A stretch of 63,973 nucleotides of DNA, counting the filler, from Octopus bimaculoides (lineage: Eukaryota): the NCBI RefSeq assembly GCF_001194135.2. It is 5 parts of 5 records of this genome, joined end to end, with 100 filler letters (N's around TTAATTAATTAA, not from the genome) between each part and the next. Parts side by side here need not be neighbours in the genome. Positions count along the whole stretch, not along the records: positions 38,324 to 63,973 come from NC_069009.1; 4 more parts are not named here. The stretch is one strand, 5' to 3'. The translations under genes and the position numbers were made by a program. Each line of letters opens with the position of its first letter. Positions within the stretch are counted from its first letter, which is position 1. This document shows, one piece after another, positions 53,938 to 63,973 of the stretch. Under the pieces are notes generated by a model. That model had not been told where the DNA came from, made no database searches, and was given only the letters and a program-made list of their open reading frames with translations.

Positions 53938-54177
53938 CAAGGGCGATTGATGTTCAGTTTATCTTCGAAATTATCACCGAATGATTTATTTTCTCCACAT
54001 TGAATTATCACTGAATTCTGTTTTGTAAGTTAAATATTAATCTGAAATTGAAATCAAAGATATATTCATATCATGGAACAGGGTCCAATGCTTTTCCTTC
54101 GAAGAATATGTAATGGGAAATAATTGACATTGAAGGTTCTGTATTTTCTTCTTTTACAGATTAATCTACGCTTCAAA

Positions 54178-54359
54178 ATGTTTCATCAATTCAAATTGAC
54201 TTTTGTGTTGGTATTCTATATGAGTTTCTGTCTGGAGTCTCAAGCTGTTTCAGTCATTTGCAGGATATGCGAATGTCGAAATTCTCAGACAAATATAGTT
54301 TGTTTATCTCGGGGACTGACTTCGGTCCCGCAACCCATTCCATCGAATGTTGAATATTT
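54178..54359 (+). CDS. LRR protein, first coding exon: signal peptide + LRRNT cysteine cap
   Basis: ATG at 54178 lies 18 nt inside an exon opened by the acceptor ttttcttcttttacAG (ends 54159). It encodes MFHQFKLTFVLVFYMSFCLESQAVSVICRICECRNSQTNIVCLSRGLTSVPQPIPSNVEY(L): a hydrophobic leader, then a CxxCxC...C..GLTSVP LRRNT pattern. It ends TT|GTAAGT (phase 2). Confidence 0.9.
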
Positions 54360-54767
54360 GTAAGTATTAGACCATTTCTACATATTTTTCACATTCAATG
54401 TTGGTAATAACCTTAACTAATACCTTATGCTTTTGATCTTAGCTATGCTGGAGGAAAAAGGGCAAATATGTTAACTGCCGTGAAGCCAAGTAGATTTTTT
54501 ATCTGTACATATTGACTCAGACGGAGTCTATAATTTACAATATCTAATCTTTGATGACGTTAGTTTATTACATAAAATCTCATTCTGATAATATTCAGGG
54601 AACGGACAGTATGAAAACCTTTGGCGTTAGCATAACGTGTTGCATATATTGTTGTTATGAAGGAGAGTATAAAATGGAGGAAATATTCTGATAATTCTAA
54701 TTCTAAATGATACTACTGTAAAAATCATATATAAACGTAACCACTCGACTTCGGGGTCGAGTGGGCA

Positions 54768-56619
54768 TTGCACTTCATTTTTATCATTCTTTCATAATTT
54801 CATTCGTCACTTTTATCTTTTCTTCTTTACTCAATTTCCTTTTAGTAATTCTTAGTTCCCCGAATTTATGTTTTGTATTGTCTCTGTGTATTGTAAGGCA
54901 CCTCTATGTTGCTGGTGTGGGTAGTGTAAAAAAAATGAAAACTGTAGTCATTTTTGACCACAGTACGATAGAGGAAGGTTGTGTTTTTGAGACTTGCTAA
55001 TGATATTATTGTTACTATTACTGTTGAAGCGACTTTCACGTATTTGTTATTTACTACTATTATTGTTTTTTAGCTTTTTTCTCTCCATTGTGGGTGAGAA
55101 AAAATACTTAGCTTTTCCAGCATGGAAATCTATGCAAAGACGGCTCCAGCGAAAACAGCAATGCTGTTAGAGACGAGGCAAATAAAATTTGACTAGGAAA
55201 ATATTTTAAAAAGTGAACAACTTGTGCAGAAGGAGGGAGATACTATCAAGCCCCTCCCTCCACAGAAGAGGATGAAAGATAAGAGGGACAGGACGGTAAT
55301 GTATTGCACAGAAGCGGTCGTCACCAGCAAGATAGAAATATTTGTAGAGGAAGATATTGAGGAATGTCTGGGAGACATAATGAAGAAGGCTACTTTTATT
55401 GGCAGAGGAAGAAGATAGAGCACGGTGGAGGTGAGGTTTGCTACCAAAGAAGAGGCGGCCTCACATTCCATTACCATTCTGAGGTCGAGCGATGTAGCGC
55501 TGTTACCCGCGTATAGGGGAAGGCGCAGTGTTCGAGTCAGAGCAGCGGGAGTGCCAACCGATATCAAAACATAGTGGTTGGTGGCAACTATTTTGGCTGC
55601 CACTGAAGACAATCGGGAACGGGGACCGATAGGAGAGACAAAAGTGTTAAACTGCTGAGGATTCGGGGTCGAGATATGGCTTTTTGCCACATTTGAAGAC
55701 ATAGAGCGATTCCTCTACCAGATTGAGATTGCATTAAAAAATAAGCTGAAAGTTGTTGTAGAGGGACGTCGACCCAATTGTTATATATGCGGAGTGAGGG
55801 GTCACCTGAAGACACAGTGCCCCAAGTTCGAAGAGACTTAGAGCAAGAAAGTAGAGGAAAAAGAACAGGAAACGGAGATAGAAGAGAGAACTAAAACATA
55901 GAAAGAGAGAAGTGAAACAAGGGAAAACAAAAGCAATTTTTAGTGCATCAGTGACGAAAAAGTGAAAGAAAAGATTGAAGAGAAAGAGGCAAAGGAGGGG
56001 AGTGACTGGTTTGTCAGCCCCAAAACAAAAAAGAAAGAGAACATTGAACAGAAACCGAGAAGAAGCCGCAAAAAATATAGGGAACAACCTAAACCTAAAA
56101 ATATATAAGCAGTAGAAAGAAAAAACAACCGAAGAAGAATGAATGAATTATAAGGGCTTCCTGATAATCTACAAAAAGTGTGTGGAGGTGGAAAAAAGAA
56201 TAGCAAAATTGCAAGGACTTGTGAGGGTGAGGCTACCCAGAGAAGAATTTGAGGGAGATGATAAAGGAATTATGATGCAGGATGAAAGGTTTCATAGGTT
56301 TATGGACACAGTCGGTGGATCGGTATGTATGGTGGACAGGATATGGTTTCGTGATGCTCCGCCGTCTGTAATGGAATATGAGGAACTAACACGAATAGCA
56401 ATAGGAACAGTATAGAAAAAAAAAGATGATAAAAATGTGAACTTATTTGTTTGAAAAAAAAATAATGGGAAAAACTGCGCTTCATTTTTATCATTCTTTC
56501 ATCATATCATTCGTTTCTTTTCTTTTTTCTTCTTTACTCAATTTCATTTTTGTAAATTTCAGTTCCCCGAGCTTATGTTTTGTATTGTCTTTGTGTATTG
56601 TAAGGCACCTCTATGTAGC
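54768..56619 (+). mobile_element. Degenerate ORF1(gag-like)-only L1/Tx1-type element between 145-bp direct repeats
   Basis: Broken ORF with VEVRFATKEEA and SVRVRAAGVP segments and a CCHC knuckle CYICGVRGHLKTQC (55779-55820), with several stops and frameshifts. Direct repeats at 54768-54912 and 56475-56619. No RT seen. Confidence 0.75.
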
Positions 56620-57436
56620 CTTTATGGGTAATAAAACTAGAGGTCAGTTAGTGATGAGGGACATCTCTGAGAGCTGTGTATTACTTCATTTTGTTTGTGT
56701 TTAACGTGTTTCACCGAAAGGTTAGTTAATTAAAAATTGTTGCCTGCTTGCGGGATTTGTTATTGCCTTCTTGCAGGATTTGTTATTTGTTTTGTGGTTT
56801 CCCGTAAAGGAAACGTTGTTAAAATATTTTTTGTAAAATAATATCGTGAACTATTATCTTCCCCGAAGGCGGAAGGTTATATAAGATTTTTTATTGCGTT
56901 ACGGGGATTTTGTTAAATATAATTTGAACTGTGTTCCATTTCGGAACAATTGTTAAAAATATTCTTTCTGTGTTTTTTTAATATTGTTTTGTGTTTAAAA
57001 AAATACTGAATAATGTCTTCAAGTGAAGGAAAAAAAATGAATTTTGTCGCCGCTGTTGGTGGTTCTGAAATGATAACATTTCCAGACCTATTTTGGTATG
57101 ATAAGTGAGGAAAATGATGAGAGCAAAATAACTCCACCTAACAAACTAATAAATAAGACAACAGAAAAAAGCCATCATCTATAAATCTTATGATTTAGAA
57201 AAGAAGAAATTCTAACAACTAGAAGAGAGCACCGTTGAAAAGTGCTCGGGTCGGTAATAAAACGAATAAAATAGCCGACCTCACCGCCAACTTTCTCAAC
57301 AGGATCGCCATTATGCTCACCATCATCGTAATCTACTTTCATCTCTTCCGCTATCTCATTGTTTAACCATAATATTTAATATTCTGCCACAAATTTGTTC
57401 CATAAATGTTCTTCTTAACTCAATATTATATTGCAG

Positions 57437-57508
57437 GAATTTGGTATCTAACAACATCAAAGAAATAAAATCAGGAACTTTCCAAAATCTTTCCAATTTA
57501 ACATCTCT
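57437..57508 (+). CDS. LRR exon A (72 nt, phase 2/2): (L)NLVSNNIKEIKSGTFQNLSNLTS(L)
   Basis: ttgcAG acceptor and GTAAGT donor. Exactly 72 nt, in frame with the signal/LRRNT exon, and a typical 24-aa extracellular LRR. Confidence 0.92.
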
Positions 57509-62580: not shown

Positions 62581-62644
<64 letters not shown>

Positions 62645-62822
62645 TATTAATAATAATAATAAGCTTCATATTCTTCCTATTCTTTCCCTTTCTTCATGTT
62701 TTTTGGAATTCTTCTGCCACTTCTACTTTCTCTACTTTTTCTCTTCTTCTACTCCATCTTCTACTCCTTCGCCTCCATTACTCCTCCACCTACTTCTCCT
62801 CCTCTTCCTGCTGCTGCTGCTG

Positions 62823-62868
<46 letters not shown>

Positions 62869-63387
62869 CTTGTCTCTTCTCATTCTTTTTCTTCCGCTTC
62901 TTTACCTCCTTGTCCTTGTCTCGTCCTTTTCTATTAATTCTTCCTCTCCTTCTTCTTCTTCTTCTGCTTTTTGTTCTCCATCTTTTTCTCAATTCTGTCC
63001 TTCACCACCATCTGCTTGTTTTTCGTGATGTTTTTGTTGTTGTTGTTCTTCTTCTTCTTCTTCTTCTTCTTCTTCTTCTTCTTCTTCTTCTTCTTCTTCT
63101 TCTTCTTCTTCTTCTTCTTCTTCTTCTTCTTCTTCTTCTTCTTTCTTCACTATCTTCCCAATCTCCTCTTCATTTTTTGTCCTTTTCTTCTTCTTCACCA
63201 TTTTCATCACTACCATCACCATCAACTCTACCGCCATTATTATTTCCCCTTCCTATTCTTCCTCCTCCTCCTTCTGCTTTTGTTCTTTCTCATCATTATC
63301 ATCAACAGCATCATCATCGTCATCACCTTTGTATTATTCATCTCATGTTATACACAATCTCTTATTAACTCAATTTTATGTTCCCAG

Positions 63388-63459
63388 AGATTTGAGAGAT
63401 AATGACATCAATGAAATCAAAGCAGACACTTTTCGAAATCTGTCCAGTTTAGAATATCT
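63388..63459 (+). CDS. LRR exon D (72 nt): (L)DLRDNDINEIKADTFRNLSSLEY(L); gene continues beyond the window
   Basis: tcccAG acceptor, GTAAGT donor, 72 nt, canonical LRR. No stop codon is reached within the window. Confidence 0.92.
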
Positions 63460-63973
63460 GTAAGTTTAATCGGTTTTCCTTTTTTAGTATTTCATAGAAG
63501 ATATATTTCTAAATCTGTAATATCTTCCAATATATCACTTTAATCTCATTTACTCGTTTTTCAAAGGTGTGTTTATTGCTTACGAAACCGTGTGTATGCC
63601 CGTTTCTAAGGTATGGAATATATGAGAGCAAGATACTTCGGGGAAAATATTTTGCGCACGTATCCCTATGCGTAAAATCTCTCTGCGCGATGGGAGTGTT
63701 AATGTATTGTAATGTCTGTGAATGTGTGTGAGAACTAATTCCACACAATTGTTATATAAGTGTGTGTACCAATTAAAACTGTCACTTAGTCAAATGTCTG
63801 TCATTTTGTGTATGGACGTGTGCATGAGAATATATCAACATGTATGTGTAATTCGTTCCCTATACGATATACGGTGATTACGTTTGCATGACCACTGATT
63901 ATCGTCCTAGAGGTCTCTTCTTGTACTACTTGTTGTTATCGTTGTTGTTTTTGTTTCTTCTTCTTCTTCTTCT

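What the first reader, a model, noticed from the sequence alone, without database searches (positions are those of the whole stretch)
54160..63973. Secreted/surface LRR gene growing by tandem duplication of single-LRR exon+intron cassettes
Seen: a signal peptide + LRRNT exon, then four 72-nt exons, each encoding one 24-aa LRR and each with phase-2/2 boundaries. The flanking introns are recognisably homologous for hundreds of bases and carry similar (TTC)n/(ACT)n tracts, so whole cassettes were duplicated recently enough for introns to still align. Established: 72-nt symmetric LRR exons occur in Slit- and LGR-type genes, but old genes have lost intron similarity. Inference: this is an actively expanding, possibly copy-number-variable LRR array in a lineage-specific recognition protein (immune, chemosensory or LGR-type receptor). 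The C-terminus is outside the window, so the class is unknown. None of the short LRR exons appears in the ORF track.
Basis: partly seen in the sequence, partly recalled or inferred. Interest (0 to 1): 0.85.

Follow-up and report, generated by a model that had tools for sequence, protein, structure and literature searches.

The report
Octopus LRR gene built from duplicated exons
This is the front end of an octopus-specific surface-receptor gene in which every leucine-rich repeat is its own 72-base exon, and whole exon-plus-intron units were copied in tandem: a known way for such receptors to grow, seen here while the copies can still be traced and compared between two octopus species.

Summary
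There is an ATG/signal-peptide/LRRNT exon (54178-54359) and four 72-nt, phase-2/2 exons with AG|..|GTAAGT sites (57437, 59278, 60686, 63388), each encoding one 24-residue LRR. Shuffles of the piece predict 0.005 such exons.

Units 2-4 are tandem copies of 1.4-1.9 kb. Their introns are 79-81% identical and their exons 78-82%. Unit 5 is older. The N gap lies inside a repeat element in intron 4, and a gap-free Octopus sinensis counterpart has no exon there.

That counterpart shares the upstream region, exon 1 and intron 1 (76-86%) but has a different cassette set, including copies 91-96% identical. So the array has turned over since the two species split.

The same exon design runs through an octopus-only family. 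Longer models add an LRRCT-like Cys-rich segment, a GPS motif and a secretin-type 7TM. The gene is therefore most likely the ectodomain of an octopus-expanded adhesion GPCR, not an LGR or TLR. Its C-terminus lies outside the window, so this is inferred.

Concave-face codons differ at about twice the intron rate (P≈0.0015).

This is a new member of known kinds. The copies here are about as old as the species split, and copy-number variation is untested.

The parts
54040..54177 (+). Conserved 5' flank/5'UTR. It ends in an acceptor-like TTTTACAG (54152-54159) 18 nt before the ATG.
   Evidence: The three-way alignment (window, O. sinensis L001, paralogue O. bimaculoides L002) is about 89% identical overall. 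This flank is better kept than the mature-protein codons.
54178..54359 (+). Coding exon 1: start codon, signal-peptide-like leader, LRRNT Cys cap and the first half-repeat. Phase-2 donor GTAAGT.
   Evidence: The four Cys are invariant in relatives. 86% nt and 72% aa identity to L001 9296-9477. AF2 gives a helix at 2-30 followed by cap strands.
54769..56630 (+). Decayed retroelement inside intron 1. It has a gag-like ORF with a CCHC knuckle and many stops, between 155-nt direct repeats (54769-54923 and 56476-56630).
   Evidence: The same insertion is present in L001 10060-10833 (86%).
57437..57508 (+). LRR exon 2 (NLVSNNIKEIKSGTFQNLSNLTS), 72 nt, phase 2/2
57282..59137 (+). Cassette unit 2: upstream flank, exon 2, 370-nt homologous downstream flank, (TTC)n and (ACT)n.
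59278..59349 (+). LRR exon 3 (IWGLNDIKEIKAETFQNLSSLKF), 72 nt, phase 2/2
59138..60532 (+). Cassette unit 3. It includes an internal partial duplication: 59592-59748 matches 59784-59937.
60686..60757 (+). LRR exon 4 (YLGFNHIKEIKVETFQNLSNLRI), 72 nt, phase 2/2
60533..61146 (+). Cassette unit 4: the part homologous to units 2 and 3.
61207..61448 (-). Inverted copy of the intron-3 segment 59489-59729 (92% identical). With 60910-61146 it forms a palindrome of about 540 nt in intron 4. This is the youngest rearrangement in the window.
61626..62580 (.). Interspersed repeat element in intron 4 that runs into the assembly gap (N 62127-62580).
   Evidence: 61756-62008 matches 49801-50053 at 97.6%, and that copy also abuts a gap. 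L001 holds the orthologous copy at 30104-30738, uninterrupted and without an exon.
63388..63459 (+). LRR exon 5 (DLRDNDINEIKADTFRNLSSLEY), 72 nt, phase 2/2. It is the orthologue of L001 exon 31972. The window ends 514 nt further on, in the next intron.
   Evidence: NJ bootstrap 88-99 with L001_31972.
63345..63645 (+). Cassette 5: the exon plus the flanks that still align to other cassettes.

Best explanation
The region is the 5' part of a real, intact gene of an octopus-restricted family of extracellular LRR proteins.

Shown:
- A leader/LRRNT exon is followed by LRRs that are each encoded by one 72-nt, phase-2/2 exon.
- Units 2-4 are tandem copies of one 1.4-1.9-kb exon+intron unit.
- The array differs from that of its O. 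sinensis counterpart.

Inferred mechanism:
- Unequal crossing-over or replication slippage between the homologous, microsatellite-rich introns adds, deletes and recombines whole units.
- Every unit is symmetric in phase 2, so any gain, loss or skipping keeps the reading frame and adds or removes exactly one turn of the LRR solenoid.
- After duplication the scaffold residues are held by purifying selection. The six concave-face 'x' codons diverge faster than neutral, which gives new binding surfaces.

Inferred from relatives (the C-terminus is outside the window): the array continues into an LRRCT-like cap and further modules. It ends in a GAIN/GPS domain and a secretin-type 7TM. The protein would then be the ligand-binding ectodomain of one of the octopus-expanded adhesion GPCRs.
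For: Gene anatomy, open frame and the LRR domain. The AF2 model has pLDDT 88.7, and the best folds are VLR, Slit D2, LRRTM2 and NgR.

Tandem-unit homology. Intron identity (79-81%) is about equal to exon identity (78-82%). The copies differ by about 20%, so they are not an assembly duplication.

Counterpart locus: L001 (O. sinensis, gap-free) is collinear with window 51812-56657 at 76-86%, including two shared transposon insertions. The paralogue L002 matches only around exon 1, at 74%.

Array turnover:
- The window has A-A-A-C. L001 has A-B-C, three truncated A copies, then A-A'.
- Window exon 5 groups with L001_31972 (bootstrap 88-99).
- Window exons 2-4 form one clade with L001_17471 and L001_34899 (97-99).
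- L001_17471 and L001_34899 are sisters (100).
- L001 copies are 96.5%, 91% and 90.7% identical, which is more than the interspecies identity.

Same exon design elsewhere: 5 exons in L001, 8 in L002, 22 in L003 and 6 in L004.

Link to adhesion GPCRs:
- The window protein matches the O. vulgaris model P0239 at 54% over 133 aa (E 5e-42), including the leader exon. P0239 carries 7tm_2.
- It matches P0191 at 59% over 157 aa. P0191's tail matches P0260 (87% identical) and P0317 (73% identical). P0260 has GPS and P0317 has 7tm_2.
- A 1088-aa O. sinensis gene carries LRR_8, GPS and 7tm_2.
- P0239 has a weak precomputed GAIN_ADGRA3 hit.
- Ritschard et al. 2019 (PMC6408891) describe an octopus-specific adhesion-GPCR expansion. 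LRRs occur in 5 of 22 members, some members are tandemly co-localised, and there are signs of positive selection. [quoted passage not shown]

Selection: concave codons show 24 differences in 54 sites against 10.7 expected from introns (P=0.0015). The rest of the exon shows 19 in 162, below the intron rate (P=0.03). Paralogue dN/dS is 0.33-0.79.

Splicing support is indirect. O. sinensis RefSeq isoforms X1-X3 join the leader exon to these exons and skip single ones.
Against: The window stops 514 nt after exon 5, so no LRRCT, GPS or 7TM is seen for this gene. Its O. sinensis counterpart contig ends in the array too.

Every model linking this leader exon to a 7TM is an automated prediction spanning 119-249 kb and could be chimeric. 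P0239 even lacks an LRRCT.

No transcript or protein of this exact gene exists in the collections searched.

Between the window and L001 the coding sequence evolves at dN/dS about 1.2 over 83 codons. That fits fast adaptive change but also relaxed constraint.

The selection test rests on three related 72-nt exons.

The window's species is unknown, so 'orthologue' could be 'very close paralogue'.
Confidence: 0.7

Rival explanations
1. It encodes a small secreted LRR-only protein: leader, LRRNT and a few LRRs, with no membrane anchor. It would act for instance as a soluble binder or decoy. Termination would come from the in-frame TAA that every unspliced donor provides (CT|GTAAGT reads Leu-stop).
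For: RefSeq models of the closest relatives are exactly of this form, at 86, 133 and 157 aa, and all end ...L right after an LRR exon. The donor-encoded stop is present in all four exons here.
Against: Those models begin at the ATG and end at the donor stop with no UTR. In L001 another intact LRR exon (36018) follows the model's end just before the contig ends. In L002 the annotation splits one array into two genes. They therefore look like truncated predictions. An LRR solenoid without a C-terminal cap is unusual for extracellular LRR proteins. Longer family members do have an LRRCT-like cap.
Confidence: 0.12
2. It is a decaying gene fragment or pseudogene in a tandem cluster, and the exons are only relics.
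For: dN/dS is about 1.2 against the O. sinensis counterpart. No annotated protein or transcript-derived protein with this sequence was found. The neighbourhood is rich in transposons.
Against: All five exons are open and all eight splice sites are canonical. All scaffold residues (N, I, F, L) and the four cap Cys are kept. The non-concave parts of the exons are more conserved than the introns (P=0.03). Paralogue dN/dS is below 1. The 5' flank is conserved across paralogues. The counterpart has RefSeq isoforms.
Confidence: 0.08
3. The intron similarity reflects selection on splicing signals, or ongoing gene conversion among old cassettes, and not recent duplication.
For: Proximal flanks (40-140 nt upstream, 50-190 nt downstream) align at 70-80% even with distant paralogues in L003 and L004. 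Acceptor and donor contexts are nearly identical across the family. The similarity is mosaic: the upstream flank of window units 2-4 is closest to L001_31972, and the downstream flank to L001_34899. That indicates recombination between cassettes.
Against: In units 2-4 the similarity runs through the whole 1.4-1.9-kb unit, including microsatellite regions, at the same level as the exon. The flanks of the orthologous pair (window unit 5 and L001_31972) are 65-75% identical, no better than the 76-86% of other noncoding DNA, so they are not under extra constraint. Conversion and unequal crossing-over are the same recombination process, so this rival modifies the main explanation and does not replace it.
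Confidence: 0.15
4. The repeated cassettes are an assembly artefact of a gap-rich short-read assembly.
For: The piece has seven N runs. One lies in the finding, and repeats abut the gaps.
Against: Exon 1 to 62126 is one gap-free stretch. The units differ by about 20% plus indels. The gap-free O. sinensis contig shows the same kind of array.
Confidence: 0.02
5. It is an LGR-type (class A) GPCR or a Toll-like receptor ectodomain.
For: The best solved sequence relatives include TLR3 and LGR4/5 ectodomains. One family member is named 'toll-like receptor 5' by NCBI.
Against: Those matches are generic to typical LRRs. No family member shows 7tm_1 or TIR in Pfam. They show 7tm_2 and GPS instead.
Confidence: 0.03

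Closest known systems
Octopus-specific adhesion-GPCR expansion ('group 3' of Ritschard et al. 2019, PMC6408891)
   Same: Both are restricted to Octopus and belong to the secretin/adhesion class, with LRRs in some N-termini. Some members are tandemly co-localised and show signs of positive selection. The window's leader and LRR exons match models that carry 7tm_2 and GPS.
   Different: That paper defined the group by the 7TM/GPS part and did not describe the exon structure of the ectodomain. Membership of this gene cannot be shown because its 3' part is outside the window.
Brown-algal LRR-ROCO and other LRR genes with shuffled 72-bp phase-2 exons (Zambounis 2012; PMC11378527)
   Same: One LRR per 72-bp exon, all introns phase 2, arrays that vary by exon duplication or shuffling, alternative inclusion of LRR exons, and positive selection at exposed positions.
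   Different: Those are cytoplasmic ROC-COR GTPases in a stramenopile, so this is independent convergence. Here the protein is secreted or on the surface, has an LRRNT cap, and the introns are still alignable.
Tetrahymena 90-bp-exon LRR genes (PMC6564038)
   Same: Clonal expansion of fixed-length LRR exons separated by phase-2 introns. Young copies still share nucleotide identity, and ectopic recombination is proposed.
   Different: 90-bp exons, thousands of genes, a ciliate, and no cap domains.
Glycoprotein-hormone receptors / LGR4-6 and Slit
   Same: Ectodomain LRRs are encoded by similar-sized exons with phase-2 introns, as cited in PMC11378527. They also have an LRRNT-capped typical LRR fold.
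   Different: Those genes are ancient, their orthologous exons are fixed, and intron similarity is lost. LGRs have a class A 7TM, whereas relatives here have 7tm_2 and GPS.
Vertebrate ADGRA2/ADGRA3 (GPR124/GPR125), LRR-bearing adhesion GPCRs
   Same: An N-terminal LRR block on an adhesion GPCR. There is a weak precomputed GAIN_ADGRA3 hit on P0239. The architecture is from my own knowledge and PMC9539791.
   Different: Vertebrate ADGRA genes have a fixed, short LRR block and are single conserved genes. Homology of the octopus family to ADGRA was not tested here.
Agnathan variable lymphocyte receptors
   Same: They are the best structural match for the LRRNT plus 24-residue LRR model (4k5u, TM 0.76, rmsd 0.9). 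Diversity is concentrated on the concave face.
   Different: VLR diversity arises by somatic copying of cassettes without introns into an incomplete gene. Here the cassettes are ordinary spliced exons in germline order.

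Membership tests
Extracellular 'typical' LRR domain with N-terminal cap | Tandem 24-residue repeats with the LxxLxLxxNxL core | tested here: met
   Pfam LRR_8 at 1.4e-24 and LRR_4 at 3e-13. N, I, F and L are invariant in 17 cassettes.
Extracellular 'typical' LRR domain with N-terminal cap | LRRNT four-Cys cap directly before the first repeat | tested here: inconclusive
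   C28/C31/C33/C42 are present and invariant in relatives. PDB alignments to LGR4 and NgR start at the cap (query 30-157). However, Pfam LRRNT is not reported for the window protein at E<=0.1 and falls just below cut-off in relatives (20-25 bits against 25.8).
Extracellular 'typical' LRR domain with N-terminal cap | Cleavable signal peptide | not testable with these tools
   No signal-peptide predictor was available. By inspection, residues 1-23 form a hydrophobic core ending ESQA, and AF2 models them as a lone helix.
Extracellular 'typical' LRR domain with N-terminal cap | LRRCT cap | not testable with these tools
   It would lie beyond 63973. Relatives carry a Cys-rich segment after the last LRR (MMCGCxLPALVNYT...), judged LRRCT-like by eye and not named by Pfam.
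Octopus-expanded adhesion GPCRs | GAIN/GPS autoproteolysis domain | not testable with these tools
   Outside the window. Present in the relative P0260 (GPS 8.6e-14) and in the 1088-aa O. sinensis gene.
Octopus-expanded adhesion GPCRs | Secretin-type 7TM (PF00002) | not testable with these tools
   Outside the window. Present in P0239 (4.8e-10) and P0317 (2.1e-16).
Octopus-expanded adhesion GPCRs | N-terminal exon homologous to that of a family member carrying the 7TM | tested here: met
   54% identity over 133 aa to P0239, including the leader, E 5e-42. Caveat: P0239 is an automated 119-kb model.
Octopus-expanded adhesion GPCRs | Restricted to Octopus | tested here: met
   The only hits above about 45% identity among 5.8 billion proteins are O. 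sinensis, O. vulgaris and O. bimaculoides. The next hits are generic LRR proteins.
LGR-type (class A) LRR-GPCR | Rhodopsin-type 7TM (PF00001) | tested here: not met
   Tested on relatives only: they have 7tm_2 and GPS, and no 7tm_1.
Toll-like receptor | TIR domain after a single TM | tested here: not met
   Tested on relatives only: P0201, which NCBI names TLR5, has no TIR hit.
Exon-cassette LRR arrays (ROCO / Tetrahymena / gonadotropin-receptor type) | One repeat per exon, all exons the same length | tested here: met
   Four 72-nt exons here and 41 more in L001-L004.
Exon-cassette LRR arrays (ROCO / Tetrahymena / gonadotropin-receptor type) | Symmetric intron phase (2/2) | tested here: met
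Exon-cassette LRR arrays (ROCO / Tetrahymena / gonadotropin-receptor type) | Cassette number or identity differs between close relatives | tested here: met
   The window and L001 arrays differ, and L001 has copies of 91-96% identity.
Exon-cassette LRR arrays (ROCO / Tetrahymena / gonadotropin-receptor type) | Alternative inclusion of single LRR exons | tested here: inconclusive
   The only evidence is RefSeq isoforms X1-X3 of the O. sinensis counterpart, which skip exon 17471 or exon 26535. No RNA data for the window.
VLR-type somatic assembly | Donor cassettes without splice sites, copied into an incomplete germline gene | tested here: not met
   All cassettes have AG/GT sites and lie on the same strand, in order, downstream of the leader exon.

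The most novel reading that the evidence does not exclude
The symmetric single-LRR exons are used combinatorially. Regulated skipping of individual cassettes would let one gene, and a tandem cluster of such genes, produce many ectodomains of different length and surface on a common adhesion-GPCR signalling module. This would be an octopus-specific diversity system for neuronal or chemotactile recognition, analogous in logic to Dscam or clustered protocadherins. Intron-retention products ending at the donor-encoded Leu-stop could add soluble decoys.

Three observations fit this reading:
- The O. sinensis counterpart's isoforms skip single LRR exons.
- The promoter-proximal flank is conserved among paralogues.
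- Diversification falls on the concave face.
Probability: 0.15. Interest if true: 0.8.

Novelty: new member of a known kind. Interest (0 to 1): 0.45.

Why it matters
Octopus genomes are noted for lineage-specific expansions of cell-surface recognition genes such as protocadherins and GPCRs. This locus shows how the ligand-binding part of one expanded receptor family changes. Whole one-repeat exon/intron modules are gained, lost and recombined on the time scale of species divergence, and the binding face diversifies faster than neutral sequence.

There is also a practical consequence. Current automated annotations of this family are fragmented. They include 86-157-aa 'LRRC4-like', 'TLR5' and 'Slit-like' models that end at stops encoded in splice donors. 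Counts and domain calls for these receptors are therefore unreliable until they are re-annotated with long-read RNA.

Tried and rejected
- Exact-sequence look-ups of six window-encoded ORFs or spliced products found nothing. The source species and any annotation of this gene remain unknown.
- A search with the seven-LRR product of L002 did not return the annotated 181-aa protein, so L002 could not be extended downstream.
- The profile search of 1.84 billion representatives was swamped by giant LRR proteins. It gave one useful hit, P0191.
- DNA for the loci of P0191 and P0239 could not be fetched because the gene ranges are 229 kb and 119 kb. P0004 is not on record. Physical linkage of a leader exon to a 7TM therefore could not be inspected.
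- L003 and L004 reach the modules after the LRRs but not the GAIN/7TM exons.
- Pfam gives no name to the P0191 tail after its LRRs. My by-eye impressions of these relatives (SEA-like, Ly6/uPAR-like, HormR-like) are unverified and are not used as evidence.
- No tRNA-like feature explains the interspersed repeat.
- Literature searches found no description of this exon architecture in cephalopods. A skin-mucus proteome paper mentions LRR proteins only generically.
- A hidden exon in the N gap was considered and rejected on the evidence of the O. sinensis counterpart.

Full report
**What is there**

Exon 1 (54178-54359, 182 nt) starts with ATG. It encodes a hydrophobic leader (MFHQFKLTFVLVFYMSFCLESQA), a four-Cys cap (CRICECRNSQTNIVC) and the first half-repeat, and it ends at a GTAAGT donor in phase 2.

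Four exons of exactly 72 nt follow: 57437-57508, 59278-59349, 60686-60757 and 63388-63459. Each has a pyrimidine-rich ...CAG acceptor and a GTAAGT donor. Each begins with the third base of a Leu codon and ends with the first two bases (CT) of the next. Each encodes x-L-x-x-N-x-I-x-E-I-K-x-x-T-F-x-N-L-S-x-L-x-x. The spliced frame is open for 157 residues.

Pfam LRR_8 scores E=1.4e-24. PDB sequence matches (LGR4, NgR, TLR3, NGL) align from the cap onward. An AlphaFold model (pLDDT 88.7) superposes on lamprey VLRs, Slit2 D2, LRRTM2 and Nogo receptor.

A mechanical scan for AG+72 nt+GT with an open frame and all seven LRR scaffold positions finds exactly these four exons in the 25.6-kb piece. Shuffles predict 0.005. 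Nothing LRR-like lies upstream of 54160 on either strand.

**The gap**

The N run 62127-62580 lies in intron 4. Its left flank belongs to an interspersed repeat. A second copy of that repeat (49801-50053, 97.6% identical) also runs into a gap, so the assembler failed inside a repeat.

In the gap-free O. sinensis contig L001 the left flank aligns to 29980-30602 (80%). The right flank aligns to 31445-31661 (75%) and onward to the orthologous exon. The roughly 840 nt between is repeat interior and contains no LRR exon. The two sides are therefore collinear. A hidden exon of this family would in any case be frame-neutral.

**Cassette homology**

Self-comparison shows that units 2, 3 and 4 are tandem copies of a whole 1.4-1.9-kb unit. 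Each unit holds about 150 nt of upstream flank, the exon, about 370 nt of downstream flank, a long (TTC)n tract and an (ACT)n tract.

| Comparison among units 2-4 | Identity |
|---|---|
| Upstream 150 nt | 76-84% |
| Exon | 78-82% |
| Downstream 350 nt | 78-84% |
| Unrelated sequence from the same piece | 45±5% |

Over 488 ungapped intron columns the units differ by 19-21%. Unit 5 is older: its exon is 71-75% identical, and its introns fall to background beyond about 100-190 nt.

Partial rearrangements also exist. There is an internal duplication (59592-59748 and 59784-59937). A 243-nt inverted copy of an intron-3 segment lies in intron 4 (61207-61448, 92%), and it is the youngest event in the window.

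**Relatives and the counterpart locus**

The only close proteins among 5.8 billion are from Octopus.

O. sinensis contig VCDQ01005429.1 (L001) is collinear with window 51812-56657 at 76-86% identity. The collinear stretch includes a LINE-like fragment upstream, exon 1 (86% nt), and a decayed gag-like element in intron 1. The O. bimaculoides paralogue L002 matches only around exon 1, at 74%. L001 is therefore the orthologue, or a very close paralogue, from another octopus species. The window's own species could not be identified.

The LRR arrays differ. The window has A-A-A-(gap)-C. L001 has A (17471), B (26535), C (31972), three truncated A copies, then A (34899) and A' (36018). Neighbour-joining trees on introns alone, or on exon plus flanks, give these groupings:
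- Window exon 5 groups with L001_31972 (bootstrap 99 and 88), so these two are orthologous.
- Window exons 2-4 form one clade with L001_17471 and L001_34899 (97-99).
- L001_17471 and L001_34899 are sisters (100).

Within L001 some copies are 96.5%, 91% and 90.7% identical. That is well above the interspecies identity, so duplication or conversion continued after the split.

In the window, units 2-4 are about as diverged from each other as the two species' noncoding DNA. Their multiplication therefore dates to roughly the time of the split. The similarity is mosaic, as expected from unequal recombination: the upstream flank of window units 2-4 is nearest L001_31972, and the downstream flank is nearest L001_34899.

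**A family-wide design**

The same 72-nt phase-2 exons, with near-identical splice contexts, occur in every family locus fetched.

| Locus | Species | 72-nt LRR exons |
|---|---|---|
| Window | unknown octopus | 4 |
| L001 | O. sinensis | 5 |
| L002 | O. bimaculoides | 8 |
| L003 | O. bimaculoides | 22 |
| L004 | O. sinensis | 6 |

Window cassettes align to all of them over the exon plus 40-190 nt of flank at 70-80%. Short flank similarity is thus a family trait. Only the unit-long homology of units 2-4 speaks for relative youth.

**What the gene is**

The window ends in the intron after exon 5, so the class must be inferred from relatives.
- A profile search retrieved O. sinensis P0191 (461 aa). 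It has the same leader and cap, ten LRRs, a Cys-rich LRRCT-like segment and a tail.
- That tail recurs at the N-terminus of O. vulgaris models with a GPS motif (P0260) and a secretin-type 7TM (P0317).
- P0239 joins the same leader exon and LRRs to 7tm_2.
- A 1088-aa O. sinensis gene has LRR_8, GPS and 7tm_2.

Ritschard et al. 2019 (PMC6408891) described an octopus-specific adhesion-GPCR expansion. [quoted passage not shown]

The most likely reading is that the window holds the 5' ectodomain part of such a receptor. No relative has 7tm_1 or TIR, so the LGR and TLR readings are not supported.

There are two caveats. All linking models are automated and span 119-249 kb. L003 and L004 reach the post-LRR modules but not the GAIN/7TM exons.

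**Truncated models**

Every donor is CT|GTAAGT in phase 2, so an unspliced donor reads Leu-TAA. The 86-, 133- and 157-aa RefSeq 'LRRC4-like' proteins of O. sinensis and O. bimaculoides all end exactly at such a stop. They are therefore probably truncated predictions. An LRR-only secreted product by intron retention still cannot be excluded.

**Selection**

Among units 2-4 the six concave-face 'x' codons carry 24 differences in 54 site-comparisons. Resampled intron triplets predict 10.7 (P=0.0015). The remaining 54 nt per exon carry 19 in 162, below the intron rate (P=0.03). This is the pattern expected if the scaffold is constrained and the binding face is pushed to diversify.

Against L001, dN/dS is about 1.3 for exon 1. 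In its mature part there are 11.5 nonsynonymous against 0.5 synonymous changes. For exon 5 dN/dS is 1.06. The roughly 130 nt upstream of the ATG are better conserved than the coding sequence, even in the paralogue L002. The samples are small, so these results are suggestive.

**Comparison with known systems and novelty**

One-LRR-per-exon arrays with phase-2 introns that grow by exon duplication or shuffling are established in several systems:
- gonadotropin receptors
- brown-algal ROCO genes, with 72-bp exons in phase 2, alternative splicing and positive selection (PMC11378527)
- Tetrahymena, with 90-bp exons (PMC6564038)

The octopus adhesion-GPCR expansion is also published. What appears new is the connection between them. 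The ectodomain of this octopus family is built and remodelled by such cassettes, with introns still alignable and with demonstrable turnover between two species. I found no paper describing this. I rate it a new member of known kinds, of moderate interest.

Copy-number variation within a species, actual splicing of these exons in this species, and the C-terminal class all remain untested.

Noticed in passing
window 57509, 59350, 60758, 63460 (and 54360): Every donor is ...CT|GTAAGT (TT|GTAAGT after exon 1) in phase 2, so an unspliced intron reads Leu-TAA. The octopus RefSeq models P0001-P0005 (86, 133 and 157 aa) all end at such a stop. They look like truncated gene models and not true small proteins.
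   Followed up: partly
window 54769-56630 (intron 1): A decayed gag-like ORF with a CCHC zinc knuckle (...CYICGVRGHLKTQCPKF) and many stops lies between 155-nt direct repeats (54769-54923 and 56476-56630, 87%). The same insertion is present in O. sinensis L001 10060-10833 (86%), so it predates the species split.
   Followed up: partly
window 51812-53529, minus strand (ORF 52223-52516): A LINE-like reverse-transcriptase fragment lies upstream of the gene. L001 6980-8658 shares it at the same position (79%).
   Followed up: partly
window 49801-50053 and 61756-62008: Two copies of an interspersed repeat are 97.6% identical, and both run straight into assembly gaps (50054-50919 and 62127-62580). 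Further copies lie in L001 (25895-26367, 30104-30738) and L002 (6259-6480). No tRNA-like part was found.
   Followed up: partly
window 60910-61446: A palindrome of about 540 nt lies in intron 4. Its right arm (61207-61448) is an inverted copy of the intron-3 segment 59489-59729 at 92%, closer than to its own unit (77%).
   Followed up: partly
window 54040-54177: About 130 nt upstream of the ATG are well conserved among the window, O. sinensis L001 and the paralogue O. bimaculoides L002, better than the mature-protein codons. The whole 54040-54420 alignment is about 89% identical. The stretch contains a CCAAT motif and ends in an acceptor-like TTTTACAG. It could be a shared promoter or 5'UTR element of the family, or the end of a 5'UTR intron.
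   Followed up: partly
window 41053-41476 and 44226-44605: Two long perfect-register palindromes match themselves in reverse complement (89% and 79%). A repeat pair also lies around 40673-41349. They are probably foldback transposon remnants.
   Followed up: no
window 53505-54011: A (CA)n/(TG)n-rich microsatellite region gives long His/Thr-repeat ORFs on the minus strand just upstream of the gene. These ORFs are artefacts of the repeat.
   Followed up: no
L003 58792-62639, 68790-72509, 74086-78433: In the O. bimaculoides cluster, the exon block encoding the post-LRR tail modules is duplicated in tandem. It is followed directly by new LRR exons without GAIN/7TM exons in between. Either modular duplication extends beyond the LRRs, or this gap-rich assembly is misjoined.
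   Followed up: partly
L001 33121-34166 and 34193-34700: The O. sinensis counterpart carries three truncated copies of the A-type cassette, each with only the first 14-16 codons (LSYNDIQAINETTFQN). They lie within tandem repeats of about 500 nt that are 88-96% identical, and are relics of very recent unequal exchanges.
   Followed up: partly
window 57324-63323: The introns of the array are strongly pyrimidine-rich on the coding strand, with GC skew -0.2 to -0.73 and AT skew -0.11 to -0.57. The rest of the piece is not.
   Followed up: no
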